Shown here: positions 6,559 to 22,700 of the stretch, one piece after another
Numbering within the stretch: position 1 is the stretch's first letter
Layout of the letters: every line of letters starts with the position of its first letter
Virus record (IMG/VR): IMGVR_UViG_3300020188_000808
Coordinates: 62,001 to 126,000 of that record
DNA: 64,000 nucleotides
Strand: one strand, 5' to 3'
Program-made: the position numbers and the translations under genes
The notes under the pieces: model-generated
Seen by the model: the letters and a program-made list of their open reading frames with translations, nothing else
Told to the model about the DNA's origin: nothing
Databases searched by the model: none

Positions 6559-7378
6559 CTTTTATTCCTCTGTAACTTCTATCCCAATTTACTAACTTAG
6601 TAATATTTTTAATAGTTTGTTTATAGTCATTAGTTTTACACTCTATAACAGTATCTATCATTTTTTTCGTTGTATCATCTAAGTTCTGGTTTAAATATGA
6701 CTGCACAAAACTTAAATGTTGTGTTGGACTAGGGTGTAACTCTACCCATTTTTCACCGTTTTCTTCAAACCACCAACTGTGTTCTGGACTATTCCAAGCA
6801 TGTAACCCTAAAGGTTCTAACCATTCAGGTCCTTCTAACACATATCTATATTGTTCTAAATTAAATTCTTTAAATGCATCAGCAAGTTCGGGAGTATTTC
6901 TTAAATTTTCTCCATGTCCTTTTTGATGCGGTATATCAGTACCTAACGTTTCTAAGTTACTAATACTTGTAAAATAAAACTTGCAATTAGTATCTTTTAA
7001 TAATCCTTTAGTAAGTATGATGTTATTCATTGTATGTAAAAACAATGCTTTCTCATCATAAAAAGTTTCTATCCATTTATCATCAAATACTTCTTTATTC
7101 TGATAACTGAATATACTACCTTTAGTTTGCCAAGGTTCTTTGTGCTTAAAGTTAAGATAGTCGTAACGTAAATGACTTGACCATTGTACGATTACTGTAT
7201 CGTCTTTGTCAATTTCATTTGTAGCATGGCATTCTGCAACACGTTCAGCAATGGCTCTGTTACCTAAACCTGCGTGTCCCCAGTTTTGATATTCATCGAA
7301 ATCTTGTGCATATATGTCTGCATATGTAGGCCAATTCCATGATGTATAGGAACATCCAAACACAAATAAACGTTTCAT
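6548..7378 (-). CDS. SGNH/GDSL-like hydrolase-fold protein
   Basis: 276 aa. N-terminal FVFGCSYT, G.GN, IVQWS, C-terminal ELHPS. Confidence 0.6.
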   Translation of the reverse strand: MKRLFVFGCSYTSWNWPTYADIYAQDFDEYQNWGHAGLGNRAIAERVAECHATNEIDKDDTVIVQWSSHLRYDYLNFKHKEPWQTKGSIFSYQNKEVFDDKWIETFYDEKALFLHTMNNIILTKGLLKDTNCKFYFTSISNLETLGTDIPHQKGHGENLRNTPELADAFKEFNLEQYRYVLEGPEWLEPLGLHAWNSPEHSWWFEENGEKWVELHPSPTQHLSFVQSYLNQNLDDTTKKMIDTVIECKTNDYKQTIKNITKLVNWDRSYRGIKDAN

Positions 7379-7380
7379 TA

Positions 7381-8376
7381 TTAAGCAGTTACAGTTGTTT
7401 CTTCAGTAGCTTGGTACTTTTCACCAACTTTTTTCTTATTTCTAATTCCTGCTGTTACTGATTCACAAATGACACTTTCAACTTTTTCGTTCATTGCCAT
7501 AATACCGTCGTTGGTTCTGTCTGCATATTCGTCTGTTGTAACTCTAATAGGTGAATATACTCTAGCACCTTCGCCCATATCTAAAATATCAAAGTTTTTA
7601 TCTTCTGGATATGAAACATTAATTGGAAAAGTTGATCCTATTACTACTGTACACTTCTTATCTAGTGCATGAGCAATATGCTGTCCTACACTATCACACC
7701 CTAAAAAGTAATCTGCGTTTGCAATAATGCCTGCCCAATGTCTTAGGTCTGCACCCATTGGACTTGCTACAGGTTCTTTACAACCGTGTTTTGAAAAATC
7801 AATACCAAATTCTGCCATATGTACTACAGCATATTTCTTTGAAAGTGACTTAACAATGTTGACCGAGTTTTCAGCTTCAAAACTTCTGCCACTCCAGTCA
7901 GTAATAACACCGTTGTCGTGTTGAACTGCTCTTCCAAATGGTTGGAACACAACTACTTTATCTTTTTTAGTTTTTTCTCTAACTTCATCAACTAACTTTT
8001 TACCAAATAGCATTTCTTCTCTTGATAATTTTAAGATAGGTCTTTGTAGTTTACGTAATCCTTTATTATTAATTTGAATATCGTATGCTTCTGCAATACT
8101 ACATTGTTGATTATAGTACTCAAACACCCTGTATGGTTCAGGTGTTAATAAATTCATGTCTTTAAGTTTATCTTGGAAGAGATTCTTGTGCCAGTGATCA
8201 TATGCCTTTGCATGTAGTACTGGATGACCTTTATAAAAGTCAGTACCGCCTTCGCATACAATGATAAAGTTGTCTTCTGGATTTTCTTCTGCAAACTTTT
8301 CAAGTGCTGGAATACTAGCAAGAACTCTGCCAGCACCACCATTGATAAAAATAGCCGTATTTCTTTTATCTGTCAT
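7381..8376 (-). CDS. GT-B glycosyltransferase-like protein (GT9 heptosyltransferase-like)
   Basis: 331 aa. C-terminal IIANADYFLGCDSVGQHIAHALDKKCTVVIG matches the GT9 pattern. N-terminal GGAGRV lacks the usual Asp. Confidence 0.65.
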   Translation of the reverse strand: MTDKRNTAIFINGGAGRVLASIPALEKFAEENPEDNFIIVCEGGTDFYKGHPVLHAKAYDHWHKNLFQDKLKDMNLLTPEPYRVFEYYNQQCSIAEAYDIQINNKGLRKLQRPILKLSREEMLFGKKLVDEVREKTKKDKVVVFQPFGRAVQHDNGVITDWSGRSFEAENSVNIVKSLSKKYAVVHMAEFGIDFSKHGCKEPVASPMGADLRHWAGIIANADYFLGCDSVGQHIAHALDKKCTVVIGSTFPINVSYPEDKNFDILDMGEGARVYSPIRVTTDEYADRTNDGIMAMNEKVESVICESVTAGIRNKKKVGEKYQATEETTVTA

Positions 8377-8433
8377 TTTATATCCTTCTACAATTCGTGT
8401 AATTGCTTGTATAGATATTTAATGTAGATCAGT

Positions 8434-9804
8434 TTAGCTTGTTTGTTTTCTGGCTGTAATAGTTCCAGCAATACGTGTATTGCCTCTTGAATCTGTAGGA
8501 GGTGTTGGAAGCCCATCTGCAATGCCATCATCATATGGTGTACCGTCTGTGCTTAGACCTAATCTAGCCAGATCATTTGCCATATAGTTGCCGCCTGATT
8601 CAGGTGGAATAAAGTGTCCAGTTGCAGGATGATATGTATGATCCATTAACCAGCCATCTGCAGGGTTGTTACGATCTTCTTCACTTGTGTAACGTCCTAT
8701 TGCACCCGGGAATTGGTCTCTTTCACCATATACACCTGGTCTAGCCGCGTTTGGACTTTGTGGAAATCTTACCTTCCAAGGATCAATTCTAGCTACTTTA
8801 CTTAGATTAAATGTAGCACCTGAACCAGCATCTGTTGTTGGTGTAGTTGCTACTGCGTCAAGTGTTCTTGCTTCTTTAATATGTCTTGCGTTAAATGCAT
8901 TACGTGTTCTAACACCTGTAATTGCACCATCTGAATCAACTGATGTAACAATAATGTTTACATCTAATGAATCGTTTTCGTTAACAATAGCAGTATCGTC
9001 TTGACCACTAGTTGCCGCTTCAAAATCAAATCCTGGTCTTTTTCCCATTGGTTGACATAAATCGTCTAATGTACCCACGTCTGCATTTGAAAAACCAAAT
9101 ACACTTGCGTCAACATTAAAGTTATCGCCTACTGCGTATCCTGTTCCTGCTGTTGCAATAGTTACTGTCCAAGCCGCACCGTATGTAGCTGGTAAATTTC
9201 TTAAAGTTGTTCTGTAATCTTGCCAAGCAGTTAGTAATGATGCTGGCATATCTTCTGATACATGACCATCAGCCGCCGCTAATTTACCCCAACGTACTCT
9301 TTTAATTGCTTCCCAATCTGTGTGCGGTTTAATAAACGGATATGGTGTATTCCATTGTTGTGCAACCGGATCATAAGTAATTTCATCTCTATCGTATGTA
9401 TGGTCTGGTGTTGGAACTTCAGGCTCAATGTGTACAAATGGATTACCTTCCCAATCATTAATTGGAAGTGTTTCACTTACTTTTGCTCTACCTTCTAAAA
9501 ATAGTGTGTCTTGATCAGTTTCCATTAATTCACATAACAAAGGATTTTCTTCACAGTTAACTTTAACCATGTATTCACCAACGTTTGGCACATAATCATC
9601 TTCAACTTCGTAGCTAAATTTAACTTCGCCTGTACGCTTGTTGTCACGTTTACGTAGGAATACCCACATTTCTCTTGGACCTTGATACGTCCACTGCCCT
9701 ACTTTACCTAATGTTGTAGTCTGATAAAGATATGCATCTGGCATATCATAAGAGAAATCTACATCAATTTCAATAACTCTATTTTGTGCATTTGGATCTA
9801 TCAT
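8434..9804 (-). CDS. Tail-fibre assembly chaperone-like protein with inserted domain
   Basis: 456 aa. WEAIKRVR...AWQDYRTTLRNLP chaperone motif. Paralog of 11429..12121. Confidence 0.65.
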   Translation of the reverse strand: MIDPNAQNRVIEIDVDFSYDMPDAYLYQTTTLGKVGQWTYQGPREMWVFLRKRDNKRTGEVKFSYEVEDDYVPNVGEYMVKVNCEENPLLCELMETDQDTLFLEGRAKVSETLPINDWEGNPFVHIEPEVPTPDHTYDRDEITYDPVAQQWNTPYPFIKPHTDWEAIKRVRWGKLAAADGHVSEDMPASLLTAWQDYRTTLRNLPATYGAAWTVTIATAGTGYAVGDNFNVDASVFGFSNADVGTLDDLCQPMGKRPGFDFEAATSGQDDTAIVNENDSLDVNIIVTSVDSDGAITGVRTRNAFNARHIKEARTLDAVATTPTTDAGSGATFNLSKVARIDPWKVRFPQSPNAARPGVYGERDQFPGAIGRYTSEEDRNNPADGWLMDHTYHPATGHFIPPESGGNYMANDLARLGLSTDGTPYDDGIADGLPTPPTDSRGNTRIAGTITARKQTS

Positions 9805-9826
9805 ATTCTTTTCCTAATTGTTACCT

Positions 9827-10633
9827 TTAATAATATACCACATATACTGCGCCTTCAGCACCTGGTGAACCACAACAGCATCCGCCGCCCATAGTTTGAC
9901 CTGCTTCGCCTGCGCCGCCTGGCCATGCACCAAATCCTTGACACTCACCGCCTCTTGCACAACAACCATTTGGTCCAATCTTTGGTCCTGCTTGTGCCAT
10001 TGGAGCAGTAGGAACAAATTGTAGTCCTCTATCGCCACAATGCTGTGATCTTTGTGCAGATCCAGTCATACTTGCAATACCAAAGTCAACGTTATTAGGT
10101 TGAATTTGACAGTTATAACAGTTCATACAACATCCGTAACAGTTAAAAAATCCATGACAATGTGTACAGTTACTACAGTAACCGCCACAAGCTACAGCAC
10201 AAAAACATGAGCCGCCTGTTGGTGTTCCAAATACAAAACTATTATGTCCTGCGTAGTTATTACCTGCATATAAACAACAGCCCGAACGTCCTGCACAAAT
10301 TGTGAATTGATCACCACCTGCTACGTTAGCTGATTTAATTGCATATCCTCCTGAATCCGATGGATATCCCTGCATACAGCAACATCCGCCTGTTCCTGAG
10401 CCACCACCGCCCCACATTTCCCATACAGCAAATGTAGCACCTTGTGGTACTGTCCAACGACAACATTTACCACCATTGTTGTTACAATAATATCTTGATT
10501 CTGGTGGAACTCCGTAAGCTGTTGCTGGCCACGCTTCGTTGTGATCTGCGTTCCAAGCATAACTTACAGTAAACGACTTTGGAGCAATAACTCCTACATC
10601 GTAACCTGGTAAATAATCTCTTAAACTTGACAT
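9827..10633 (-). CDS. Cys/Gly-rich fibre-tip (gp38-adhesin-like) protein
   Basis: 268 aa, 27 Cys by hand count. WTVP...WGGGGSG.GGCCC and terminal G.V.V.Y glycine-rich-domain pattern. Confidence 0.65.
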   Translation of the reverse strand: MSSLRDYLPGYDVGVIAPKSFTVSYAWNADHNEAWPATAYGVPPESRYYCNNNGGKCCRWTVPQGATFAVWEMWGGGGSGTGGCCCMQGYPSDSGGYAIKSANVAGGDQFTICAGRSGCCLYAGNNYAGHNSFVFGTPTGGSCFCAVACGGYCSNCTHCHGFFNCYGCCMNCYNCQIQPNNVDFGIASMTGSAQRSQHCGDRGLQFVPTAPMAQAGPKIGPNGCCARGGECQGFGAWPGGAGEAGQTMGGGCCCGSPGAEGAVYVVYY

Positions 10634-10645
10634 ATTCTATACTCC

Positions 10646-11416
10646 CTACGCTATATCCGATTGATAATAAACTACTACTAATCCGCCAGCGCCTGGTCCA
10701 CCGCAGTAACAAGTACCATTGTGAGTATGTAGCGTACCACCGCCTCCGCCTGGGAAGTCAGCTGGTCCGTCTGCATCTCTACCGTGTGTTTTATAACAGT
10801 TATCTCTTGACATTCTAGCTTGTTGTCCACCGTATGGTGCTGACGTCATGTTTTCCCATGATGAACTAGCACACATTGCTGTACCTGCTCCACCACCGTT
10901 AAATCCGCACATACTAAAGTCTGCGCCTTTTACACAACCGCACATTCTATTTGGACATCCGCAATGTCCGCCCCATGCACTACCAAATCCGCAAGTTGCA
11001 CAGCCATATCCGCCGCCACTTGAGCATAAGCACATGTAACCGCCTGAACAACAGCCGTTGCTTGAACACGCATAACTACCACATCCTGGACAGCCCATAA
11101 CTGGTCTACAGCAACCTGCCGCTCCTGCACATAATGTAAATGATGCCGCATTATTAATTTCTACAATTTTTCTACCGTATGATCCACTTCCACCAGGAAA
11201 GCCAGCCATACAACAACAGCCACCGCCGCCGTCACCGCCTGCACCCCACGTTTCAAAAGCGGCCCATGTTACATCGTCACTTGGGTTCCAATTACAACAG
11301 CATCCTGGGTTACTATTTCTAGTATTATCAAAAGAACTATGATAAACATAAATTGTTCTTAATGCTGGAGTACCTGTTGCAGTTCCAAGTTGTAGTAATG
11401 ATCTTAATGCAGACAT
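10646..11416 (-). CDS. Cys/Gly-rich fibre-tip (gp38-adhesin-like) protein
   Basis: 256 aa, 27 Cys by hand count. WGAGGDGGGGCCC and PGGGGG...GAGGLVVVYY. Confidence 0.65.
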   Translation of the reverse strand: MSALRSLLQLGTATGTPALRTIYVYHSSFDNTRNSNPGCCCNWNPSDDVTWAAFETWGAGGDGGGGCCCMAGFPGGSGSYGRKIVEINNAASFTLCAGAAGCCRPVMGCPGCGSYACSSNGCCSGGYMCLCSSGGGYGCATCGFGSAWGGHCGCPNRMCGCVKGADFSMCGFNGGGAGTAMCASSSWENMTSAPYGGQQARMSRDNCYKTHGRDADGPADFPGGGGGTLHTHNGTCYCGGPGAGGLVVVYYQSDIA

Positions 11417-11428
11417 TTATATTTCTCC

Positions 11429-12121
11429 TTAACCTATTCCTACGCCATCAGTTGACGGTGGTTCAGCATATCCGCCTACAGTTGGTTCTTCTGGGAACTT
11501 AACCATATGTGCTGGATATTCATCACTCTCGCCACGTTTGAACGTAACCGGTAATTCTCTTAATTTTGTTCTGAAATCAATCCATGGTTGCTTAACACTA
11601 TCAGGCATATCTGCCGCAACTCTGTGATCTGTTGCATCTAATCTATCATTTCTTAGTTGAGTTAGTGTTTCCCAAGTTTGCCAAGGTTGTTTCCAAGTTA
11701 GTGTCCAATTATTACTATCTTCATCATGTACACATAAATCTCTTTCGTAAGCATGATCTGGCATTGGAGGCCATTGAGTTGAGTAATTTCCATAACCTTC
11801 TGGTAATGCTGTTACTACTTCTGATTGTGATAGTGTTACTGTATGTGGTAGGAAGATAGAACACATTAATGTGTCTTCTCCAGCACAATCTAAAGTAACT
11901 AATCTTTCACCTTCTGGTGTAGTATCAGTTGTTGGATTGTAAATAAAATCTTCATCTGGTGCGTTTTGACTCAGTGTGTTTTTTCCTGTAGTAGCATCAA
12001 CAAATACGTATAGTCTGTCTGGACCTGTATAACTTGCTGTTGCTGTGTCCCCATCCGAGTTTGATTGACTCAAATATTCATTGGGGATATCATATGTAAA
12101 GTTTTTTGTAATTTCAGCCAT
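11429..12121 (-). CDS. Tail-fibre assembly chaperone-like protein
   Basis: 230 aa. WETLTQLRNDRLDATD...PWIDFRTKLRELP motif. Confidence 0.7.
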   Translation of the reverse strand: MAEITKNFTYDIPNEYLSQSNSDGDTATASYTGPDRLYVFVDATTGKNTLSQNAPDEDFIYNPTTDTTPEGERLVTLDCAGEDTLMCSIFLPHTVTLSQSEVVTALPEGYGNYSTQWPPMPDHAYERDLCVHDEDSNNWTLTWKQPWQTWETLTQLRNDRLDATDHRVAADMPDSVKQPWIDFRTKLRELPVTFKRGESDEYPAHMVKFPEEPTVGGYAEPPSTDGVGIG

Positions 12122-12150
12122 TTTGTTTCCTTCGTTTGTATTTAGTCATA

Positions 12151-12891
12151 TTAACTGTACGATACTTTAACCATTCCGCCTGAGCCCCAATGGCCCCAAC
12201 AGCATGGTCCGCCACATGCAGTACCATTATATCCAGCGTCCCCTGGGTAAGGTTGAGCACAACCCCATCCGCAACCTGAACAAGTCATTGGATTACCGCA
12301 ATAATCTCGACCTTTTCTAGTATTTGCACCTTTTGGTGGTCCACTTACGTAGTCCCACATTTGATTGTGACAATATTGTGTAGCCATAGGATTATTTCTA
12401 CTATGACCTAATCTTAAATCGCCCTGCGTACCGCCCGAAATTTGTGAACATCCAAAGCAACAGTTATATGCATAATGTGCATGACAGTTTGTTCTACCTG
12501 TACATCCACCTCTAGCACACGTAGTTGCAATACCAGATCCTGATACAAAACTAGTTGAACCATCAATGCCTAAGCAATCTCTTTCACAACATGCTCCGTT
12601 ACCAGCCGCACAAATTGTGTATTGGCAACCAGCTATTGTGTTTACTGATCTAATTGCGTATGATCCGCCGCCTGCGTTCTGTGAACTAAACTGACAGCAA
12701 CATCCTCCTGCTCCTGCGGCTCCTGCACCCCATAGCTCAAATGTTACGTTAACAATGTCTGCTGGTACTGTCCAAAGACAACAGCAACCGCCATTATTAA
12801 TACCCCTATTATTGTTGTACACATAGAAGAACTTTGTAGGAGCCGAAGTTCCCGAAGTAGTATCTCCTAAAAGTGTTCTCAGGTCTGCCAT
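12151..12891 (-). CDS. Cys/Gly-rich fibre-tip (gp38-adhesin-like) protein
   Basis: 246 aa, 25 Cys by hand count. GGCCCLWTVP...WGAGAAGAGGCCC...GSGGMVKVSY. Confidence 0.65.
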   Translation of the reverse strand: MADLRTLLGDTTSGTSAPTKFFYVYNNNRGINNGGCCCLWTVPADIVNVTFELWGAGAAGAGGCCCQFSSQNAGGGSYAIRSVNTIAGCQYTICAAGNGACCERDCLGIDGSTSFVSGSGIATTCARGGCTGRTNCHAHYAYNCCFGCSQISGGTQGDLRLGHSRNNPMATQYCHNQMWDYVSGPPKGANTRKGRDYCGNPMTCSGCGWGCAQPYPGDAGYNGTACGGPCCWGHWGSGGMVKVSYS

Positions 12892-12909
12892 AGTTAGTAT
12901 CCTCTCTTC

Positions 12910-13242
12910 TTACGTTCCTGACATAATCCAGCCGTATGTGGACCCGGAATAAATCAATGTAATAGCTACGTTATTAATGTCTAAAGTTAAGTCTTCTGAT
13001 AAATTCTGGATTTTTGAACCGTTTCTACCAAGTGTTACATTGTTAGTATTAAAACTACCTGTAACATCAATGATTGAAATAGTATCGTTTACAATTAAAC
13101 TAGCGTTAGCTGGTAAAGTAATTGTGAATCCACCACCATTTGAATTAGCTAAAATACGATCGTTAACTACAGCTTGATACGTGCTACTAACTTCACGAAT
13201 GACGCTACTTGCAGTTCCTGTTGTTGATATATATCTTCCCAT
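12910..13242 (-). CDS. Small fibre-associated beta protein
   Basis: 110 aa. GGFTITLPA...IIDVTGSFNTNNVTLGRNGSKI...LIYSGSTYGW, a pattern typical of phage fibre domains. Confidence 0.6.
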   Translation of the reverse strand: MGRYISTTGTASSVIREVSSTYQAVVNDRILANSNGGGFTITLPANASLIVNDTISIIDVTGSFNTNNVTLGRNGSKIQNLSEDLTLDINNVAITLIYSGSTYGWIMSGT

Positions 13243-13275
13243 TTTAGTGTTTCCTTTTTATTACTATATTTATCA

Positions 13276-13596
13276 TTATGCTGTAGATGTCTCAATACCC
13301 ATTGCTACTGCACTGACATTTGCGGCACTACTATAAACTACCAGAATTTGCCCTGCCGCCATTGCAATACCTGATCTTTCTAACACACCTTTAGCTAAAA
13401 TTTCAACATCATATTCAATGTATTCACTTGCTAGTGGTGTACCAGCTGATGCGACAGCAACTCTTACCGAAATTGCACTATTTCCTCTATTACAAATCGA
13501 TAGCGTTACAATCCCGAAGGTGTTTGCAGGTACCGTGTAAAGAGAAGTGTTAGTGCCAGCGGCTAAGTCTGCGTGTCCTAATCTTCCTGTGGCCAT
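13276..13596 (-). CDS. Small beta-sandwich virion protein (paralog of 25495..25824 and 29440..29772)
   Basis: 106 aa. LYTVPA...LSICN motif. Confidence 0.6.
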   Translation of the reverse strand: MATGRLGHADLAAGTNTSLYTVPANTFGIVTLSICNRGNSAISVRVAVASAGTPLASEYIEYDVEILAKGVLERSGIAMAAGQILVVYSSAANVSAVAMGIETSTA

Positions 13597-13608
13597 ATTG
13601 TTTCTCCT

Positions 13609-16600
13609 TTAACTCAATATAAATTGTTGCATTGCAACTGGTGATCCGCTTACGCCACCTGTGAAATGCATCTGTGCTGTTGTATTTATTAATACTCCGG
13701 TAGTTGTTGTAATTGTATTACCTTGAATATTAATTACTCCAGCTGTTACACTATTTACGTTCAATTCTGACGCTCCTCCACCAATTTGGCTAGTAATATA
13801 TGTCTTAATAGCTTTTTGTGTAGGAACAATACTGTCACTATTTGCTGTAAATGTTCCGTCTGTACTAAACTCATTAACTGTTGCACCAGCACCGCCAAGT
13901 GCTACTGCTCCAAGTTGTAGTTCTTGTAGTCCTGATATACTAAATGCATCAGCATTTAGGGTTGCAATACCAGTTGCTTGTTCAACACTAAACAAGTCGC
14001 CAACTCTAAAGTTACCGTCTTGGTCTGTACTTGTGAAGAACACTCTTCCTCCACCGCCTTCAACAGCTTCATCATTTGGATCAGCTGGTGTAGTTGGTGT
14101 GCCTGGATAGTTAGTAGTAGTAAATCCACCAGTACCAATATCCAAATAATCGTGACCTGTAAGTCTACATTGTGAGTATCTAATTCTCATCTCTATGTTA
14201 TCACCATGTATTGGAGCATCATCTAATGCCATATTTGGTGATATTTGTAACAATGCTGAGTAAGGTGAACTACCTGTTAACTGTGTAACACTAACTAGTT
14301 TAAAGAATGTTCCTGGTAAACTAGCAAACTCAACGTTTGCGCCAGCTTGTGGAATACTTTCCATTCCTTCGACTTGGATATACTTGCCATCTTGTTTAGC
14401 ATCTCTATATCCTGCTCCGTAAGCAATAGTACCGTTAACAATGTATGGACTACCAAGTGTAAGTACTGCTGGAAATAGTCTATAAACATCTAAGTAAAGT
14501 TGTAATGTGTCGCCATCAATAACTTTTACATAATAACTATTACCATTAAGTTGAGTAGTACCACCTACACCATTAATTAATACTTTATCTCCGTCTACTA
14601 ATCCGTGTGTAGCAACAGTAATATTTAAAATACCTGTTCCGCCATCTTTTGGTAAACTGTCAAGACCGTTAATTAATCCTTCGTTGATAATGTCAATTAA
14701 CTCGCCAGCTAATGTAATAGCACCTGCTTCTGCATTATTAGCATTTGTAGTTTGTGTAGTTACTACTGGACTTTGTAGAGTTGTATATGTTGTATTAATT
14801 AAAATATAACTGTTTAATAACGTTCTCATAAACTCATAAGCCGCAAGTTTTTGACTTTGTCTTCCTGGTAGTGTAGTGTTAACACCAATCCAATAACTTC
14901 TTGCCGCTTTAATTGATTCTTTAGTTCCACCAAACTTAATGTCATGTGCTAATGCGTCAACATATTCGCCAACATTTGATTCCCATGATGATTTGTCATA
15001 TGTAAATGCATTCCATAATGTAGAACTACCTGCGTTTGCAATTTGGTTATCAATCCAAGCAATAACTTCGTCTTTAATAAATTCTTTGTTGTCAGTAAGC
15101 AATGTATAAGCAAACGGATTAGCAGTAAATGTTACTCCTGTAATATCTTTACTAAACCCTGCATCTGAAACTGTTGCTGTTGCCGCTGTCCAACCTGTTC
15201 CTCTTGAAGCAAATGTTGGTTGTGCAAGTACACCATCAGCAACAAATACTTCTAATGGAGCATCTAATGTATTGTTTGGATCTGTAAATGTTACAGTTGG
15301 AGGTGTTGTATAAGAAGCACCTGGATGGATAATTCTTACTTCACTAATTTTACCATCTGCAACTTTTGCTCTTGCAACTGCTTGAGCCGTTGCTGTTGAT
15401 CCATCATTGCCAGGAGCACTAATGTTAACTCTTGGTTCAATGCTATATTGTGTTGTATTATCTAATTCAGCTTCAACGGCTTGTCCTGGCACAGTAACGT
15501 CCCAACCAGCTGTGTCATCTGAATACTTTTTAATATTAGCAATCTTTGTACCTGCATTATAAGTGTCAATATACCCATACTGTCCAGCACCTGTTCCGCC
15601 TACAAGGAATACTGCCATACCTGTGTATGCCGCACTCAACGAAGCGTCAGTGTTTGAAATTGTAATACTTGTAGTATCACCTGTCTGTGGAGTATTTGTT
15701 GCAGTTTTATAATCTGCACCACCAAATGTATCATCGTCACCTGTTAAACGAATTTGCATAACACCACCAGTTACAACTGTTGGAGTTAATCCTGTAATAC
15801 CAAATCCATCTCCAGAATAACTAAGTGTTGTGTTTGCCGGTACATAATCTCTACCTGCATGAATGTATTCATGGTGTATAATTCCTGCGTTGTCTGTTAC
15901 AACTGCACCAATTACAGCATCAAAACTTCTATTATCTACTGTTGCTTTAATAGCTGTTTCAGTTAAGTCAACACCTTCTGCTACAGTACCAAAGTCACCG
16001 TATGAACTGTTACCGTTAGTAGCACGTATTTTACCACCTGCTTCTGCAAGATAACCAATGTGTCCATAATATGAGAACACGGAAACAAGTTCTGCTCTTC
16101 CTAAGTTAGTTACCCATGCACCAATACCTTCATCAAGTACTTGTGTAAAGTCGTTAGCAACAATTGAATCGTTACCACCGTTGTGAATATCTCCGTCAAC
16201 TTTCATACCAACACATCTTGTACCAAATGTTGTTACGTTTTGTACATATGGTGAACGTGTGTTAATCCACGCATCTTCATCATCTGGTCCCCAACTTGGG
16301 TTAAGTGAACAAAATGCTCCTGCTGTTGGACGTTTAGTTCCGTATGCGTTTGGTGCACTTAATGTACCTGTTAGTCCTTTAACAGTACAGTTTCTTAATC
16401 CTGTGCCGTTTTCTAAATAGAACATGTCTTCTAGTAAACTTCCGTTAACTGCATTACTAAACCATCTAGCTACTAGGGTTGAATAATAATTGCCAAAGTT
16501 TTCTAAATCCCAAAGGACTGCTTTCATGTATTCTTTTAAATCTCTTTTACATTTTGATTGCATACTTGCACTAGCCATTGCTTCTTGGAAGTCTTTTGTG

Positions 16601-19600
16601 TTGTTTGCTTGAATATATTCAAATCCTTCATCAACTAAGAAATCTAAGTTAGCATAAATTTTGCCTCTAGTATCTGTGTATGCCGCATCAACTCTTCTAC
16701 CAACTTGTCCTACAACTGTTGGCTTAGTTCCTGCGCCGTTAACTTCATAATCAATCCAATCATGGATGTCTTGTACTAATAATTCTGCTGTTTCTACAGC
16801 CGCCGCAGTACCTGCTGGAACATTTGTATCTTGTGTACGTGTGTTTCCTGTAGCGATTGTTGCAACATCCATTGTAAATGCCGCTCCGCCGCCGCTACCT
16901 AATGCACTATCTGCAATAGTAATTGTGTCATTAACTGCATGTCCAGAACCTGCTGTAACTACTAGTACGCTTGTTACTGCTCCTGTTCCGTCAACTGCAA
17001 TATCAAAAGTTCCTACTACTCCTGTGCCACTAGATGATCCAGTTACACCTGTGTAGGTTCCTGTTGCTCTACTTGCGTCTGCGGCTCCAAATGTATCCAT
17101 TGTTAAGTGGCCACCTGCTGGTGTTTTAGTAACAGAATTATTTAAAATTGTATCACTAAGTATTGCCTTCATTCTTAAAATAGCAATTTTACTTAAATTT
17201 GCATCGTTAGTATCAGTTGGTCCAGCTGTTGCCGCACTAATTTCAGTACTACGTAATTCATCGCCAACAACTGCTGTATCTGCTGGAACAATAATCGGAA
17301 GTACTTCGTTGTATTGTCCTGTTTTAACAAAAATTGACACGTTTGGTTTAATCTTTTTAGCTAAACTATTTGTATTACCTGCTGTAATTGTATCTGTAAT
17401 TAATATTGTTAGTGCGTTAGCTGTTGTTTCAATGTTTGGTTCAGCAGTTTTAGTAGAATCAGTAATTTGTAAAACTGGTGTTGCTACGCTGTTTAATGTT
17501 GCGTAGTTTACTGCTGGCGCTAAGTTAGTAATAATGCTTGGTATTAAACTCATTGCATAATTAATTGCCGCATTGGTTTCGTCTTCTTGTCCTGATACAT
17601 AGTTTGCACCTGCAGGTGAAATATAAGATAACGCCGCTTCACGCATTCTTACGTTTCCGCCGTGTCTTAAATCCCATAGTAATGCATCTAAAATAATTCC
17701 AATGTCTCTACGACACTTAACTGCATCGTATGTAAATCCACTTGTAAACGGAGCAGTATTATTTGCAATACTGTGTGTAATAAACTCCATTGTTTGTTCT
17801 TGAATAAACTGTTTATTTCTTTCAATTAGATATGTTGCTTCAGGATTACGCGGACCTCTACGTACTTGTTCAGCCGCCCATCTTGTTGAAAAGAAAGGCT
17901 TATCAATTGTTACACCGTATGCTGGTGCAAATCCGTCTGTTCCGTTTGTACCAACATAATAAACTTGATCTAGTTGTCCAAAGTATGCCCATTCTGGAGC
18001 ATTTTCAGCTTCATTAACTTTTAATACTTGTCCTGCTTTACCAATTGGTAATCTAGTTGGACCTGCTCCACCATAGTAAACCAAATCACCAAGTGTTGTT
18101 AAGTTTCCTGATTCAACTCCACCGGATAATAAGTTCCAATATGCTCCAGCTACATCTTGATCTGGTCTGTTTTGTACTGATACTTCATCTGATGTGTGTG
18201 CTTGTACACAAATATAAGAGTTAACATTATTAATACCTCTAACAGTATCACCTAAATCATAGTATGTTGCGTCAGCCCATGCATCTTTCCAAGACATACC
18301 TTCATTAAGTCTATCCCAGTAAGTTACATTTGGTGGTCTATTTCCTGTTGTATCTTGAATACTAATATATGTGTAGCCACCTACACGTACAACATCACCT
18401 ACTTTATAAGCAGTTGCGTTGTTATAGTCGCCTTTTAAACTAAATCCTGTTGTAAATAAATCCCACGTTGCCGCATTGCCAAATGGAACAACGTTAGTGT
18501 TATTTGCTGTTGCAATATATGAGTAACCACCATAAGTTACAAAGTCACCAATTTGGTATGCAGTTGCATTTGACCAACTGTCTTCAAATTCTAATCCTGG
18601 TACAAATGTTTGCCACTGTGTTACTGTTTCAATAGTAGCAACATTAAATGTAAATCCTGTTCCTGCGCCGCCAATTGATCCTGGACCAACTGTGATTGTA
18701 TCGCCTGGAGCATGTCCTGCGCCACCTTTAACTACTACAAGTGTTACTGCACCTGTTCCGTCAACTGTTGCGTTAACTCTGTGTCCAGTACCAGTACCAC
18801 TAGTGGTACCTGTAATGTCATTGTATGTTCCTGCTATTCTGTCTGGATCAGCGGCACTAATTGTATCAACTGTTACAATATGTCCTGCGGCTGATACGTC
18901 ATCAGTTAAACTTGTTGCACTTGATGTATGTTCGTGTGTGTTAATCCAAAGACCGCCACCATACTTAACAACATCATTAAGTTTATATCTTGTATTAATT
19001 GCGTGTACTGATTTATATTCAATACCATTGTGTACAATATCCCATTTAGTTTGGTCTGACTCTAAACCATTAGAGGCTGTTGCCGCACTTTGGTGTCCTT
19101 CGTTACAAATATATAATTTGCCGCCATACTTAACAGTATCAGAAACTTTATACCTAGTTGCTACAGACCAATCTGTTTTCCAGTCCATACCTTTTGAGAA
19201 AATATCCCATTTCTCTATATCGGCTTCTAATCCGTCAGTGTCTGAATTTTGTGAGCTTGCCCCTGTATGTGCAGTATTACAAAGATATAAGTTGCCACCG
19301 TACTTAACAATATCGTTAACTTTATAAACTGTAGAAATAGTCCATACATTTTTCCAATTAAATCCTTCTGCGAATAAATCCCATTTAGCTTGATCAGTTT
19401 CTAAAATTCCAGCTAGACCAATTTCTATAGACCCGTCTGCAGATGAAGTATGTGCTGTATTACAAATATAGATATAACCGCCGTACTTGACAATATCATT
19501 CTGTTTATAATTATATCCAGAATTCCAATCACCTTGCCATTGAACGCCGTCAGTAAATAAGTTCCACTTTGTTGATTCGTCAGTAGTAAAATCAGCTGAG

Positions 19601-19731
19601 GCAGTATGCCCAACATTACAGAAGTAAGTTCTTCCGCCTTGTCTTACAATATCGTCTTTATAGTATAAAGCACCAGTTGTCCAAGTGCCTTTCCATACAA
19701 ATCTAATTCTACCTAGTTTAAATTCAGCCAT
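13609..19731 (-). CDS. Giant tail-fibre/virion structural protein
   Basis: 2040 aa. Many W....Y..GD.V.YGG..Y.C...H.S repeats, a predicted beta-helix region and C-terminal GGRVFFTSTDQDGNFRVG. Confidence 0.8.
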   Translation of the reverse strand: MAEFKLGRIRFVWKGTWTTGALYYKDDIVRQGGRTYFCNVGHTASADFTTDESTKWNLFTDGVQWQGDWNSGYNYKQNDIVKYGGYIYICNTAHTSSADGSIEIGLAGILETDQAKWDLFAEGFNWKNVWTISTVYKVNDIVKYGGNLYLCNTAHTGASSQNSDTDGLEADIEKWDIFSKGMDWKTDWSVATRYKVSDTVKYGGKLYICNEGHQSAATASNGLESDQTKWDIVHNGIEYKSVHAINTRYKLNDVVKYGGGLWINTHEHTSSATSLTDDVSAAGHIVTVDTISAADPDRIAGTYNDITGTTSGTGTGHRVNATVDGTGAVTLVVVKGGAGHAPGDTITVGPGSIGGAGTGFTFNVATIETVTQWQTFVPGLEFEDSWSNATAYQIGDFVTYGGYSYIATANNTNVVPFGNAATWDLFTTGFSLKGDYNNATAYKVGDVVRVGGYTYISIQDTTGNRPPNVTYWDRLNEGMSWKDAWADATYYDLGDTVRGINNVNSYICVQAHTSDEVSVQNRPDQDVAGAYWNLLSGGVESGNLTTLGDLVYYGGAGPTRLPIGKAGQVLKVNEAENAPEWAYFGQLDQVYYVGTNGTDGFAPAYGVTIDKPFFSTRWAAEQVRRGPRNPEATYLIERNKQFIQEQTMEFITHSIANNTAPFTSGFTYDAVKCRRDIGIILDALLWDLRHGGNVRMREAALSYISPAGANYVSGQEDETNAAINYAMSLIPSIITNLAPAVNYATLNSVATPVLQITDSTKTAEPNIETTANALTILITDTITAGNTNSLAKKIKPNVSIFVKTGQYNEVLPIIVPADTAVVGDELRSTEISAATAGPTDTNDANLSKIAILRMKAILSDTILNNSVTKTPAGGHLTMDTFGAADASRATGTYTGVTGSSSGTGVVGTFDIAVDGTGAVTSVLVVTAGSGHAVNDTITIADSALGSGGGAAFTMDVATIATGNTRTQDTNVPAGTAAAVETAELLVQDIHDWIDYEVNGAGTKPTVVGQVGRRVDAAYTDTRGKIYANLDFLVDEGFEYIQANNTKDFQEAMASASMQSKCKRDLKEYMKAVLWDLENFGNYYSTLVARWFSNAVNGSLLEDMFYLENGTGLRNCTVKGLTGTLSAPNAYGTKRPTAGAFCSLNPSWGPDDEDAWINTRSPYVQNVTTFGTRCVGMKVDGDIHNGGNDSIVANDFTQVLDEGIGAWVTNLGRAELVSVFSYYGHIGYLAEAGGKIRATNGNSSYGDFGTVAEGVDLTETAIKATVDNRSFDAVIGAVVTDNAGIIHHEYIHAGRDYVPANTTLSYSGDGFGITGLTPTVVTGGVMQIRLTGDDDTFGGADYKTATNTPQTGDTTSITISNTDASLSAAYTGMAVFLVGGTGAGQYGYIDTYNAGTKIANIKKYSDDTAGWDVTVPGQAVEAELDNTTQYSIEPRVNISAPGNDGSTATAQAVARAKVADGKISEVRIIHPGASYTTPPTVTFTDPNNTLDAPLEVFVADGVLAQPTFASRGTGWTAATATVSDAGFSKDITGVTFTANPFAYTLLTDNKEFIKDEVIAWIDNQIANAGSSTLWNAFTYDKSSWESNVGEYVDALAHDIKFGGTKESIKAARSYWIGVNTTLPGRQSQKLAAYEFMRTLLNSYILINTTYTTLQSPVVTTQTTNANNAEAGAITLAGELIDIINEGLINGLDSLPKDGGTGILNITVATHGLVDGDKVLINGVGGTTQLNGNSYYVKVIDGDTLQLYLDVYRLFPAVLTLGSPYIVNGTIAYGAGYRDAKQDGKYIQVEGMESIPQAGANVEFASLPGTFFKLVSVTQLTGSSPYSALLQISPNMALDDAPIHGDNIEMRIRYSQCRLTGHDYLDIGTGGFTTTNYPGTPTTPADPNDEAVEGGGGRVFFTSTDQDGNFRVGDLFSVEQATGIATLNADAFSISGLQELQLGAVALGGAGATVNEFSTDGTFTANSDSIVPTQKAIKTYITSQIGGGASELNVNSVTAGVINIQGNTITTTTGVLINTTAQMHFTGGVSGSPVAMQQFILS

Positions 19732-19772: not shown

Positions 19773-22700
19773 TTATATTCCCCCCGGACCGTAGCCATTT
19801 TCGCCACCATCATAGAAGCCATCACTTCCTTCAAAGTCGTCTTGACTTTCAGTTAGCATCATTGTATCCATATTGCCGTTAAAGTATGCTTGTGCCATCA
19901 TCATACCACTTGGTATCTTAGTAAAGTGCATAGGTACCGGAATATTAATAGCTAATCCACCTGTATTTGATATGTGATTTAAATCACTAAATTTACAAGT
20001 ACCTGCTGTAACTGCGTTTGCCGCTACGTTTGAACCACCACCACTAATTCTACTCTGTAAATAAGCCGCAATAGCCTTCTGTGTTGGTACAATGTTATTA
20101 CTATTAGCAACAAATGTTTGTTCTTTTGAGAATTCTCTAATTACAGCATTTGTTCCACCTAATATAAACGCACCAAGTCTAAGTTCGTCTAGTCCTTCTA
20201 GGTTAAACTGTGAAGCATTAATAGTAACAATACCTGTACTTTGCTCAACTTTAAATAATTCGCCAACTCTAAAGTTACCATCTTGGTCTGTAGAAGCGTA
20301 GAATACTCTACCACCGTTGTACTCTTGAGCTTCATATGATTGCTCTGGTGGATTAATATTACCATACCCGTCTGTATATAACAATGGATATGCAGTATCT
20401 GCAAAGTTACCTGTACCAATGTCTAAGAAATCATGGAATGTTAATCGTACCTGACTATAGTTCTGTCTAATATTTGCCGGAGTAGCATGTTCTGGTGATT
20501 CTTGCACTCCCATATTAGGACTAATTGTAAGTTTTGCAACTGCATTAGGAGCCGCACCTGACAATATTGTAGCAGTACCAACTTTATAAATTACATCATT
20601 AATACCATCAACTCTAAAGTTATCACCCGGACTTGGAATTAGTGTTAAATCACTAACAATAATTTCTCCGCCAATTTGGAATAAATCTGCATAGCCGTCA
20701 CCGGTAATTGTTACTTGGTTAAATTTAGTATACAATGCACCTCTGTTTGTAAAGTTAGGTTGTCCTAACACTCTATTTTTAATTCTAACTTGATACGTTA
20801 CTTCTGTAGTTTTTTGTGTATCATGAATATGCAATGAGGGTGGTACCCCTACATTATAACCACTACCTGGATCAGTCATTGTAAATGATTCAATGCGTCC
20901 TGTTGTTACAGGGAACGCTCTCATTTTTGCTTTAGCACCATATTTAATTGCCGCTAAGTTTGCTGTTGCCGTTGCAGGACTAATCATAAATCTTGGTCCA
21001 CTTGTTAGTGTCATTGGACTAATCTTTGGTCTATAGTTTTGTGCATTTAATAAAGGTATAGCAGGTTTACTATTCCAAACATGACCACCATCACCGTATA
21101 AAATATCTCCTTGCACACTGATTGCCATAAACAATCCATCACTATATGCAAGACCAAATACTCGTGTTCCAATAAAGTTTGGATCTGAAACAATTAACCA
21201 TTCTGAGTTTAATGCTCCAGTGTCTTTGGCTGTAAAGCTAATGTAGAATGTACTGTTTAATCCAAACGAAGCACTAGTAGTACCTGCTACGGAATTAATC
21301 ATTGTAGTTGAAGGATCAAATACAAATGTAGCAGTTCCGTTTGGTTGACATGCCGCTACAAATCTTCCATTACCAAATGCAAACCCTGTTACGTTATATG
21401 TTGTTGGACAAACTCTAGTTGCAGTAGTCCAACTTTGGCCATCGTTAATACTTTCAATAGCGGTTCCGTCTTCTTTGACAATCATCCATTTACCATTTCC
21501 GTAAGCTAAGAATTTTTGTCCTGTTCCAAATCCTGTATTAGTATAAGTCCAAGCAGTTCCGTCTGTTGTAGTAATTGCAATTTCATCACTATCGTCTGCT
21601 ATTGCTATAACTGTGTGCGAAGTTGTTGAATATGATCCTTCAACTATACTTACATAGTTGTGTGCATTAATAGAGTATGCTGTTGAACCCCATGCTGTAC
21701 CAGCAGTTGACAAGTTAGCTTTGCTACCATTGCCTAGTGCAATAAAGTATTTTAATTTACCTTTACATTTGACAATACAATTTGGTCTTACAAAGTCAGC
21801 ATCAATGATCGCCGCTGTCCATTGATCGCCTGCTTCGTTACTGTAAATAGCTTTGTCATCTCCTGTTGAAGGAAATGCAACCATTGTTGTTCCTGTTGCT
21901 GAGAAACAATCCTGCCAAGCAGTTGCTCCGTATCCTGTAGCAAAACCTTCTTCTGCATATGGAGGAGCTTCAACTTCCATTCTTGATTCAATTCTATAAG
22001 TTGTTGATCCGTCTAGTGTTGTTGTAATTGGCCAACCTGGAACTAAATGGTCCCAACCACGTTTGCCATCTGACTCGCGTAGTACATTAATCTTTTTAGT
22101 TGTAGTAAAGTATTCGTCAATTATTCCAAACTGTCCAACGCCTTCACCTTCTTCAATGATAATCTTCATTGATTCGCTAATTGCGTTTACTTGAAAAGTT
22201 AAGTTTCCGCCGCCAAAATTACCAATGTCACTATCAAGTATAGTAATAGTGTCGCCAACTCTATGACTGTGGCCACCGTTTGTAATTGTAACAGTTGGAG
22301 TTCCTGTACCGTCAATAGTAATTGTAAACGTACCTACAGTATCTTTTGCAAACGGGTTATCTGATGTTGCAGTAACTCCTGTATATGTGTACGGAGCATC
22401 AAGAACGTTACCAACCCAACCTGGATTTGCACCCGGTAATCCTGTAATCGCTGTTATTGCTCTACCAACATAATATTCTGGTCCGTTGTTATCTGACTGT
22501 GCAATAGTAATTGAAATACTATCACCGCCTTGTGCAGAGTTTCTTATACCTGTAATATGTCCTCTACCACCTGGTGTACTTGAATCACCTGGATCAAGTA
22601 ATCTAACTTCACTAATTGCACCGTTTCTTACATCTGTTGATGTATTATCAACTCCAACACCACTACCTGAACCTGTAATTGCAAAGTTTGCATTAGTATA

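What the first reader, a model, noticed from the sequence alone, without database searches (positions are those of the whole stretch)
8434..12891. Array of three extremely Cys-rich glycine-rich adhesin-like paralogs with dedicated chaperones
Seen: three ~250-aa proteins with ~10% Cys (25-27 each), conserved CCC triplets, WG.GG.G and G.V.V.Y motifs and a shared N-terminal M..LR..L, interleaved with two chaperone-like genes. Known: T-even gp38 adhesins are glycine-rich polyglycine sandwiches but not this Cys-dense. Inference: a multi-specificity receptor-binding system stabilised by disulfides or metal-thiolates, which is hard to fold in a reducing cytoplasm. The loops between conserved motifs are highly divergent.
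Basis: partly seen in the sequence, partly recalled or inferred. Interest (0 to 1): 0.7.

Follow-up and report, generated by a model that had tools for sequence, protein, structure and literature searches.

The report
Cysteine-rich cyanophage fibre-tip proteins with chaperones
Three very cysteine-rich, glycine-rich proteins in a marine cyanophage are variants of a known tail-fibre tip fold, each set followed by a fibre-assembly chaperone gene, which makes them good candidates for the poorly known host-recognition proteins of ocean cyanophages.

Summary
On the minus strand of 8434-12891 lie three paralogs, which I call CRG-A, CRG-B and CRG-C (246, 256 and 268 aa). They have 25, 27 and 27 Cys (about 10%, against 0.44% in neighbouring proteins), and two chaperone-like genes (TAC1, TAC2) sit between and after them.

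The window comes from a 268-kb T4-like cyanophage record (Kyanoviridae). The AlphaFold model of CRG-A matches the TNF-like plus glycine-rich domains of the cyanophage Pam3 tail fibre gp24 (Z 17.2). It also matches a Bxb1 tail-tip protein and the ALK/LTK glycine-rich domain. Most homologs carry Pfam Gly_rich_2. TAC1 and TAC2 carry the C-terminal helical motif of Phage_tail_APC/Tfa chaperones, as does Pam3 gp25.

The block fibre, two small proteins, CRG-A, TAC1, CRG-B, CRG-C, TAC2 keeps the same order in 78 metagenomic phage loci. A, B and C form separate orthologous clades. P-SSM2, S-SSM7, S-CAM1 and S-CAM3 have shorter versions.

So this is a Cys-dense variant of a known fibre-tip plus chaperone system, not a T-even gp38 family member. 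The role of the Cys (disulfides or metal), presence in virions, stoichiometry and multi-receptor use remain untested.

The parts
12151..12891 (-). CRG-A: 246-aa Cys-rich (25 Cys) glycine-rich protein with a TNF-like plus glycine-rich domain fold; candidate fibre-tip or receptor-binding protein
   Evidence: ORF and composition. phrog_4205 E 3.6e-28. AF2 model pLDDT 79, pTM 0.80. Pam3 gp24 Z 17.2 over 191 aa, Bxb1 9d93_Q Z 13.0, ALK/LTK Z 9-10. Homologs carry PF21722.
11429..12121 (-). TAC1: 230-aa tail-fibre assembly chaperone-like protein, with a specific N-terminal beta domain and a conserved C-terminal helical hairpin
   Evidence: PF16778 E 5.6e-4, below cut-off. phrog_9740 and phrog_4912 'tail fiber assembly' E 1.2e-7. 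Profile hit to 2KZ6 E 1.2e-5. AF2 pLDDT 91.9. 2KZ6 is the top structural hit for residues 148-214. AFDB neighbours are named phage tail assembly chaperone.
10646..11416 (-). CRG-B: 256-aa Cys-rich (27 Cys) paralog
   Evidence: phrog_4205 E 3.7e-15. 33% identical to CRG-A. Own orthologous clade.
9827..10633 (-). CRG-C: 268-aa Cys-rich (27 Cys) paralog
   Evidence: phrog_4205 E 9.9e-21. 36% identical to CRG-A. Own orthologous clade in the tree; weakly resolved.
8434..9804 (-). TAC2: 456-aa chaperone-like protein. It has the TAC core (about 1-211), an inserted small beta domain (about 212-340), the closing PWKV-x-P motif and a C-terminal extension of about 100 aa
   Evidence: PF16778 E 1.2e-4 and phrog_9740 E 2.8e-22. 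The alignment with TAC1 orthologs shows the insertion. Weak Gp18_dom_I hit E 3e-4 in the insert.
12910..13242 (-). s110: 110-aa protein resembling segments of tail fibre and tail spike proteins; a conserved companion, possibly an adaptor
   Evidence: phrog_31104 E 1e-17 and several 'tail protein' PHROGs. Always present upstream of CRG-A. Also present in S-CAM1, S-CAM3 and P-SSM2.
13276..13596 (-). s106: 106-aa tail-fibre-like small protein; a conserved companion
   Evidence: phrog_11338 'tail fiber protein' E 2.5e-11. Conserved position.
13609..19731 (-). Giant fibre protein (2040 aa) directly upstream, 12 bp from s106; the likely carrier of the tip module
   Evidence: phrog_9851 tail fiber E 2.9e-202. 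CBM_5_12 repeats E 3.8e-35.
19773..25097 (-). Second giant fibre paralog (1774 aa)
   Evidence: phrog_9851 E 1.6e-177. CBM_5_12 x6, E 8.1e-44.
7381..8376 (-). Flank, not shown to be part of the system: GT9 (heptosyltransferase)-like protein that follows TAC2 in nearly all loci
   Evidence: phrog_8954 E 5e-147. Weak Glyco_transf_9 and heptosyltransferase hits. Synteny.

Best explanation
The cassette encodes three standalone distal tip proteins of a T4-like cyanophage's fibre apparatus and their two assembly chaperones.

Each CRG has three parts. A short conserved N-terminal peptide (M-[AS]-x-L-R-x-[LFY]-L) is inferred to dock it onto a fibre or adaptor. A TNF-like beta-sandwich follows. The third part is a glycine-rich lattice whose conserved glycine motifs carry variable loops; by analogy with Pam3 gp24 these loops point away from the virion and contact the host receptor.

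TAC1 (after A) and TAC2 (after B and C) are Tfa/Phage_tail_APC-type chaperones. A lineage-specific N-terminal beta domain would hold the nascent tip. The conserved C-terminal helical hairpin would oligomerise, as in Pam3 gp25. The chaperone is probably released before the virion matures.

About 15 Cys positions are conserved across all three paralogs and 8-12 are lineage-specific. They include a CCC right after the first central glycine motif and a CC(C) right before the last one. I infer that they cross-link the lattice and sandwich, most likely as disulfides that form at or after release into oxic seawater, hardening an exposed tip.

Shown: composition, homology, fold, synteny, orthology and a faster rate than the flanking genes. 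Inferred: virion location, receptor binding, chaperone action and Cys chemistry.
For: Fold: the CRG-A model matches Pam3 fibre gp24 (Z 17.2, 191 aa), Bxb1 tail-tip chain Q (Z 13.0) and ALK/LTK glycine-rich domains (Z 9-10). Unrelated chains score Z 4 or less (Foldseek).

Family: 40 of 57 aligned homologs hit PF21722 Gly_rich_2 (labels; Atlas clusters).

Context: the genes sit 12-33 bp apart behind two giant fibre genes and two fibre-like small genes. There is no internal terminator-like site on the coding strand and no TATAAATA late-promoter motif.

Chaperones.

Solved precedent: the gp24 tip plus the Tfa chaperone gp25 form a 3:3 complex, and only gp24 is found in virions (PMC9608196). Disulfides are used in a cyanophage's fibre attachment (PMC9942802).

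Conservation: the gene order is identical in 78 loci, and A, B and C are separate clades.

Rate: at deep divergence the CRGs are about 40% and the TACs about 30% identical, while the flanking GT9-like and carbamoyltransferase genes stay about 63-65%. Host-range modules typically behave this way.

Variability sits between the conserved Gly/Cys motifs. The Cys-rich state holds across the family: all 125 full-length cluster representatives have 5.9-12.2% Cys.
Against: There is no direct evidence that the CRGs are in virions or bind a receptor.

The window's own three proteins do not reach Pfam's Gly_rich_2 threshold.

They lack the roughly 60-aa helical shaft by which gp24 trimerises and docks, so how they attach is unknown.

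The TAC hits to PF16778 are below the gathering score.

Two observations fit poorly with every Cys being locked in an intramolecular disulfide. Cys counts are more often odd than even (153 of 261). Single Cys-to-other changes occur between close relatives.

I could not read model coordinates, so no Cys-Cys distances were checked.
Confidence: 0.65

Rival explanations
1. The three paralogs form one A:B:C heterotrimeric tip, like the three clustered C1q chains with TNF-like heads, and not three separate homotrimers.
For: Pam3 gp24's TNF-like/glycine-rich unit is a trimer (PMC9608196). Three copies with the same N-terminal peptide are kept at 1:1:1 in 78 loci as three orthologous clades. S-SSM7, S-CAM1 and S-CAM3 also have exactly three. 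S-SSM7's three are a lineage-specific set.
Against: P-SSM2 has only two CRGs around one TAC. CRG-A has its own chaperone, separate from the one behind B and C, which suggests at least two assembly units. No multimer prediction could be run.
Confidence: 0.2
2. The cysteines bind metal (Zn, Cu, Cd or Fe thiolate clusters) instead of forming disulfides, so the tip folds in the reducing cytoplasm around metal.
For: CC, CCC, CxC and CxxC spacing at 10% Cys. Odd Cys counts in 153 of 261 proteins and tolerated single Cys changes. Two Cys runs flank the two central glycine motifs, which lie side by side in gp24 (sequence plus PMC9608196; an inference). No thiol oxidase is encoded in the own genome (though the control was silent).
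Against: No conserved His or Asp accompanies the Cys (invariant columns). The proteins have a defined beta/glycine-lattice fold with aromatic residues, unlike metallothioneins. Disulfides are documented in a cyanophage virion (PMC9942802). No metal data exist.
Confidence: 0.2
3. The CRGs are not receptor binders. They are structural or lipid-contacting accessory proteins of the baseplate or fibre, or substrates of the adjacent glycosyltransferase and carbamoyltransferase, and specificity lies in the giant CBM-bearing fibres.
For: Polyglycine-rich domains in mycobacteriophages are discussed as possible lipid-interacting parts on the central fibre (PMC13252515). The giant fibres carry CBM_5_12 repeats that could themselves bind host glycans. 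GT9-like and carbamoyltransferase genes follow the cassette in nearly all loci, with ADP-heptose genes in the cultured phages.
Against: The best structural match is a bona fide receptor-binding fibre. The fast evolution of the CRGs and TACs relative to the flanks fits host-range determinants. In 4 loci the GT9-carbamoyltransferase block is inverted relative to the cassette, so it is a separate unit.
Confidence: 0.15

Closest known systems
Cyanophage Pam3 tail fibre gp24 with its chaperone gp25 (PDB 7YPX, 7YFW; PMC9608196, PMC9942802)
   Same: TNF-like beta-sandwich plus glycine-rich lattice (Z 17.2 over 191 aa). Central GGGGxGG-type motifs. Size of about 250 aa. A Tfa-type chaperone gene directly downstream, with a variable N-terminal beta domain and a conserved C-terminal helical domain. 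The host is a cyanobacterium.
   Different: The CRGs lack the roughly 60-aa N-terminal helical shaft and have 10% Cys. There are three paralogs with two chaperones instead of one pair. They follow giant fibres in a 268-kb T4-like phage and do not dock directly on a minimal baseplate. No sequence-level match was found. The TAC N-terminal domain is larger (about 145 aa) and has no PDB match.
Pfam PF21722 Gly_rich_2, the 'glycine-rich domain-containing proteins' of phages and giant viruses
   Same: Most homologs of the CRGs are labelled with it. BFVD fold matches carry this name.
   Different: The window's three proteins fall below the model's reach. The Cys-dense subfamily (5.9-12.2% Cys in all 125 full-length representatives) is not singled out in any source I could search.
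Mycobacteriophage Bxb1 tail-tip polyglycine-rich domain protein (PDB 9D93 chain Q)
   Same: Same fold (Z 13.0 over 180 aa), and a tail-tip location in a solved virion.
   Different: It is a siphophage of a mycobacterium, attached to the central fibre, and I found no report of it being Cys-rich. A lipid-contact role has been suggested for such domains (PMC13252515).
ALK/LTK extracellular TNF-like/glycine-rich (TG) domain
   Same: Same two-part fold (Z 9-10). It is an extracellular ligand-binding module.
   Different: It is an animal receptor kinase ectodomain with no functional relation. The resemblance is of fold only.
T-even gp38 adhesin (Salmonella phage S16 gp38, PDB 6F45)
   Same: A small tip adhesin with a polyglycine lattice and variable distal loops, capping a long fibre. 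The Pam3 authors note an architectural likeness between gp24 and gp38 (PMC9608196).
   Different: No Pfam or fold match was found here. The middle domain is different.

Membership tests
Pfam PF21722 Gly_rich_2 | Match to the family HMM | tested here: inconclusive
   CRG-A, B and C give no hit even at E 1 or less. However, 40 of 57 aligned homologs hit it, best E 3.2e-10, and many database relatives carry the precomputed label.
Pfam PF21722 Gly_rich_2 | TNF-like sandwich followed by a glycine-rich lattice | tested here: met
   AF2 model against solved members: Z 17.2, 16.5 and 13.0. BFVD matches are named glycine-rich domain proteins.
Pam3 gp24-type tail fibre | N-terminal alpha-helical shaft that trimerises and docks on the baseplate | tested here: not met
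   Only about 20 N-terminal residues precede the sandwich; they have low confidence and hold one short helix. The structural alignment starts at gp24 residue 65-77.
Pam3 gp24-type tail fibre | Central GGGGxGG glycine-rich motifs | tested here: met
   WG-x-GG-x-G-x-GG after the strand, and G-x-x-G-x-x-G before the last strand, in all three proteins. W54, G55, G57 and G60 are invariant; G58 and G62 are conserved in at least 90% of the 54 sequences.
Pam3 gp24-type tail fibre | Trimeric, present in the virion, binds the host | not testable with these tools
   No proteome or structure of a CRG-bearing phage was found.
Pam3 gp24-type tail fibre | Cognate Tfa-type chaperone gene directly downstream | tested here: met
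   TAC1 lies 29 bp after CRG-A and TAC2 lies 22 bp after CRG-C. The same holds in all 78 loci and in four cultured phages.
T-even gp38 adhesin | Sequence or fold match to gp38 | tested here: not met
   No Pfam hit. No gp38 entry among the 50 best Foldseek or VIA-align matches.
Phage_tail_APC / Tfa chaperones (PF16778), for TAC1 and TAC2 | Match to the family HMM above the gathering score | tested here: not met
   20.1 and 22.3 bits against a cut-off of 26.6.
Phage_tail_APC / Tfa chaperones (PF16778), for TAC1 and TAC2 | Conserved C-terminal helical hairpin with the D-x-P...W-x-x-YR-x-x-LR-x-P motif | tested here: met
   A profile of 40 TACs hits 2KZ6 at E 1.2e-5 over this motif. 2KZ6 is the top structural hit, Z 6.0. 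phrog_4912 E 1.2e-7. AFDB and Atlas neighbours carry the family name.
Phage_tail_APC / Tfa chaperones (PF16778), for TAC1 and TAC2 | Binds and folds the fibre tip | not testable with these tools
   This needs co-expression. See Tried and rejected for the one prediction job.
Metallothionein | Short, about 30% Cys, no aromatic residues, no fold without metal | tested here: not met
   The CRGs are 246-268 aa with 10% Cys, contain conserved W, Y and F, and have a confidently predicted beta/glycine-lattice fold.

The most novel reading that the evidence does not exclude
The conserved Cys runs at the far ends of the two central glycine motifs, with the other 20-odd Cys, form a metal-thiolate or redox-switchable core in the fibre tip. 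The tip would then mature, or become competent to bind, only on leaving the reducing cell for oxic seawater. Alternatively, abundant ocean cyanophages would carry bound trace metal on their fibres. The three paralogs might then assemble as a C1q-like heterotrimer.
Probability: 0.2. Interest if true: 0.75.

Novelty: new variant of a known kind. Interest (0 to 1): 0.5.

Why it matters
The receptor-binding proteins of marine T4-like cyanophages, which infect Prochlorococcus and Synechococcus, are largely unassigned. This cassette gives concrete candidates. They are present in cultured phages that can be tested (P-SSM2, S-SSM7, S-CAM1, S-CAM3), together with their likely chaperones, which are usually needed to produce such proteins in the laboratory.

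The family is large: 1,190 cluster representatives at E 0.001 or less. A glycine lattice with 10% Cys is an unusual structural solution. Whether it is disulfide-stapled or metal-bound bears on virion stability in seawater, and possibly on redox control of infectivity, as proposed for Pam3.

Tried and rejected
1. Complex prediction of CRG-A with TAC1, 1:1, using my own alignments: no verdict, so it is no evidence either way. The 3:3 complex exceeds the size limit.

2. Near-identical DNA in cultured phages: none. tblastn with CRG-A found only short pieces in four records, probably because of low-complexity masking. TAC1 and profile searches worked better.

3. A profile of the CRG family against PDB sequences: no hit. 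The link to solved structures is by fold only.

4. Foldseek of the whole TAC1 model against the PDB: nothing significant. Only the C-terminal hairpin matches.

5. A link to radical SAM enzymes: rejected as a general feature. There are nine in the own genome, 75 kb away among sugar genes, but none in four other CRG-bearing phages.

6. Glutaredoxin and Erv1/Alr thiol oxidase: not found in the own record. The record is about 75% complete and the Erv1 control was silent. One thioredoxin is present.

7. Cys-pair inference from co-occurrence of Cys columns. The signal is dominated by paralog and clade identity, so I drew no pairs from it.

8. Obligate A:B:C heterotrimer as the main reading: demoted, because P-SSM2 has two CRGs.

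9. Literature searches for a description of Cys-rich fibre proteins in cyanomyoviruses or a virion proteome of a CRG-bearing phage: none found.

10. Model coordinates are not readable with these tools, so I could not measure Cys-Cys distances.
Full report
WHAT IS THERE

All genes of the region lie on the minus strand. In order of transcription they are:
- a 1774-aa and a 2040-aa fibre protein (19773-25097 and 13609-19731);
- two small proteins, s106 (13276-13596) and s110 (12910-13242);
- CRG-A (12151-12891, 246 aa);
- TAC1 (11429-12121, 230 aa);
- CRG-B (10646-11416, 256 aa);
- CRG-C (9827-10633, 268 aa);
- TAC2 (8434-9804, 456 aa);
- a GT9-like protein, a 276-aa ORF and a carbamoyltransferase.

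Gaps between genes are 12-57 bp. No terminator-like site lies inside the cassette on the coding strand, and there is no TATAAATA late-promoter motif. The genes therefore look co-transcribed with the fibre genes.

The three CRGs have 25, 27 and 27 Cys (10.1-10.5%), 18-21% Gly and two CCC triplets each. Twenty neighbouring proteins have 0.44% Cys.

WHERE IT COMES FROM

The window is positions 62001-126000 of a 267,783-bp IMG/VR virus record. Its relatives are marine T4-like cyanophages of the Kyanoviridae.

FOLD AND FAMILY OF THE CRGs

Pfam gives nothing for the three proteins themselves. PHROGs places them in phrog_4205, function unknown.

A database search found 109 relatives, many labelled PF21722 Gly_rich_2. 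Forty of 57 aligned members hit that model.

An AlphaFold model of CRG-A, built on 54 sequences, has pLDDT 79 and pTM 0.80. By Foldseek and by VIA-align it matches three groups of solved structures:
- the cyanophage Pam3 fibre gp24 (Z 17.2 and 16.5, about 190 residues);
- chain Q of the Bxb1 tail tip (Z 13.0);
- the ALK/LTK TNF-like/glycine-rich domain (Z 9-10).

The next, unrelated chains score Z 4 or less. Predicted viral structures with the same fold are named glycine-rich domain proteins, and they include proteins of S-CAM3 and P-SSM2.

In Pam3, gp24 is the trimeric receptor-binding fibre. Its TNF-like domain carries a four-layer lattice of glycine-rich motifs, with a conserved stem and a variable far tip (PMC9608196).

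The CRGs keep the central WG-x-GG-x-G-x-GG motif and the final glycine motif before the last strand. They lack gp24's roughly 60-residue helical shaft. Instead they have about 20 residues beginning with a peptide, M-[AS]-x-L-R-x-[LFY]-L, that is conserved in all three orthologous groups.

No gp38 entry appears among the matches. The link to T-even gp38 is therefore architectural at most.

THE TWO INTERLEAVED GENES

TAC1 and TAC2 share an N-terminal region and a C-terminal motif, D-M-P...W-x-x-YR-x-x-LR-x-LP. Several lines of evidence point the same way:
- sub-threshold hits to PF16778 Phage_tail_APC;
- phrog_9740 and phrog_4912 'tail fiber assembly';
- a profile of 40 TACs hits the Phage_tail_APC structure 2KZ6 at E 1.2e-5;
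- the TAC1 model (pLDDT 91.9) has 2KZ6 as its best solved match for residues 148-214 (Z 6.0);
- its AlphaFold DB and ESM Atlas neighbours are named phage tail assembly chaperone or tail fibre assembly protein.

The N-terminal beta domain (about 1-147) has no solved match. This fits the modular Tfa plan described for Pam3 gp25: a variable client-binding N-domain and a conserved helical C-domain (PMC9608196).

TAC2 also has an inserted small domain and a C-terminal extension.

CONSERVATION AND EVOLUTION

A scan of viral contigs found 489 related stretches. In the 78 loci kept, the order fibre, s106, s110, CRG-A, TAC1, CRG-B, CRG-C, TAC2 is identical, down to 37% identity of CRG-A. In 4 loci the following GT9-like/carbamoyltransferase block is inverted, which marks the end of the module.

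In a maximum-likelihood tree the first, second and third copies form three separate groups. The triplication is therefore older than this phage lineage, and each copy has been kept.

Cultured phages carry variants:
- S-SSM7, S-CAM1 and S-CAM3 have three CRGs and one TAC;
- P-SSM2 has CRG-TAC-CRG;
- all of these CRGs have 8-12% Cys.

S-PM2, Syn9 and P-SSM4 have none. S-SSM7's three copies are a lineage-specific set.

Against the window, deep relatives keep about 63-65% identity in the GT9-like and carbamoyltransferase genes. The CRGs keep only about 40% and the TACs about 30%. Variation lies between the conserved Gly/Cys motifs. This pattern is usual for host-range modules.

An exhaustive profile search found 1,190 cluster representatives at E 0.001 or less. 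All 125 full-length ones among the best 150 have 5.9-12.2% Cys. The Cys-dense state is therefore a property of a large subfamily.

THE CYSTEINES

Fifteen alignment columns are Cys in at least 78% of 261 sequences. They include C37, C38, C64-66, C94, C101, C102, C106, C125, C136, C144, C174, C198 and C230 of CRG-A. The rest are specific to a paralog or clade.

One CCC lies in the first strand of the sandwich (residues 36-38 of strand 36-41). The other directly follows the first central glycine motif. A CC or CCC directly precedes the last motif. In gp24 these two central motifs lie side by side (PMC9608196). I therefore infer that the two Cys runs meet near the far end of the lattice. This is an inference and was not measured.

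Counts are odd in 153 of 261 proteins, and single Cys changes occur between close relatives. Not every Cys can therefore be in a fixed intramolecular disulfide.

I favour disulfide cross-linking at or after release. Virions live in oxic seawater, and a cyanophage is known to use disulfides in its fibres (PMC9942802). Metal-thiolate binding is not excluded.

Radical SAM maturation is unlikely as a general feature.

WHAT IT MOST LIKELY IS

It is a Cys-dense variant of the gp24/gp25-type fibre-tip-plus-chaperone system, split into three fixed paralogs with two chaperones and attached to a giant-fibre apparatus. Homology, fold, synteny and evolutionary behaviour are shown. Virion location, receptor binding, stoichiometry, chaperone action and Cys chemistry are inferred.

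The one complex prediction allowed gave no verdict.

NOVELTY

The fold, the family and the tip-plus-chaperone logic are known. I found no description of this Cys-rich subfamily or of the conserved five-gene cassette in the papers searched. Public annotation calls these genes hypothetical. I rate it a new variant of a known kind, of moderate interest.

Noticed in passing
own genome G000:C1:150209-171298 (outside the window; loci L104, L105): A cluster of nine radical SAM ORFs, several with SPASM domains (in two the SPASM hit lies near the N-terminus), sits among sugar-nucleotide genes such as a UDP-glucose/GDP-mannose dehydrogenase. None is found in P-SSM2, S-SSM7, S-CAM1, S-CAM3 or Syn9. This is unusual for a cyanophage.
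   Followed up: partly
window 4747-8376 (-); L083, L084 and L103 downstream of the cassette: A GT9 heptosyltransferase-like gene, a 276-aa ORF with no family and a Nol-like carbamoyltransferase always follow TAC2. In S-CAM1, S-CAM3 and P-SSM2 ADP-heptose synthesis genes come next. Sullivan et al. call these 'LPS clusters' (PMC3037559). Whether they modify host LPS or the phage's own fibre proteins is open.
   Followed up: partly
window 13609-19731 and 19773-25097 (-): Two giant fibre paralogs (2040 and 1774 aa) carry 4 and 6 N-terminal CBM_5_12 carbohydrate-binding repeats (phrog_9851).
   Followed up: partly
window 8434-9804 (-), TAC2 residues about 212-456: TAC2 carries an inserted small domain with a weak tail-sheath Gp18 domain I match. 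In this clade it also has a conserved C-terminal extension of about 100 aa with no family. Orthologs range from 201 to 496 aa.
   Followed up: partly
window 12910-13596 (-): Two small proteins (106 and 110 aa) resembling pieces of tail fibre or tail spike proteins sit between the giant fibre and CRG-A. They do so in every locus and in S-CAM1, S-CAM3 and P-SSM2. They may be adaptors.
   Followed up: no
window 2952-4646 (-): A 564-aa protein whose C-terminal roughly 110 residues match fibre-like PHROGs (phrog_27200, phrog_9158, phrog_15006) and, weakly, a cupredoxin-like domain.
   Followed up: no
window 8001-14000: Local G+C rises to 0.39-0.43 against 0.34-0.38 around it. The Gly and Cys codon load of the cassette probably accounts for this.
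   Followed up: no
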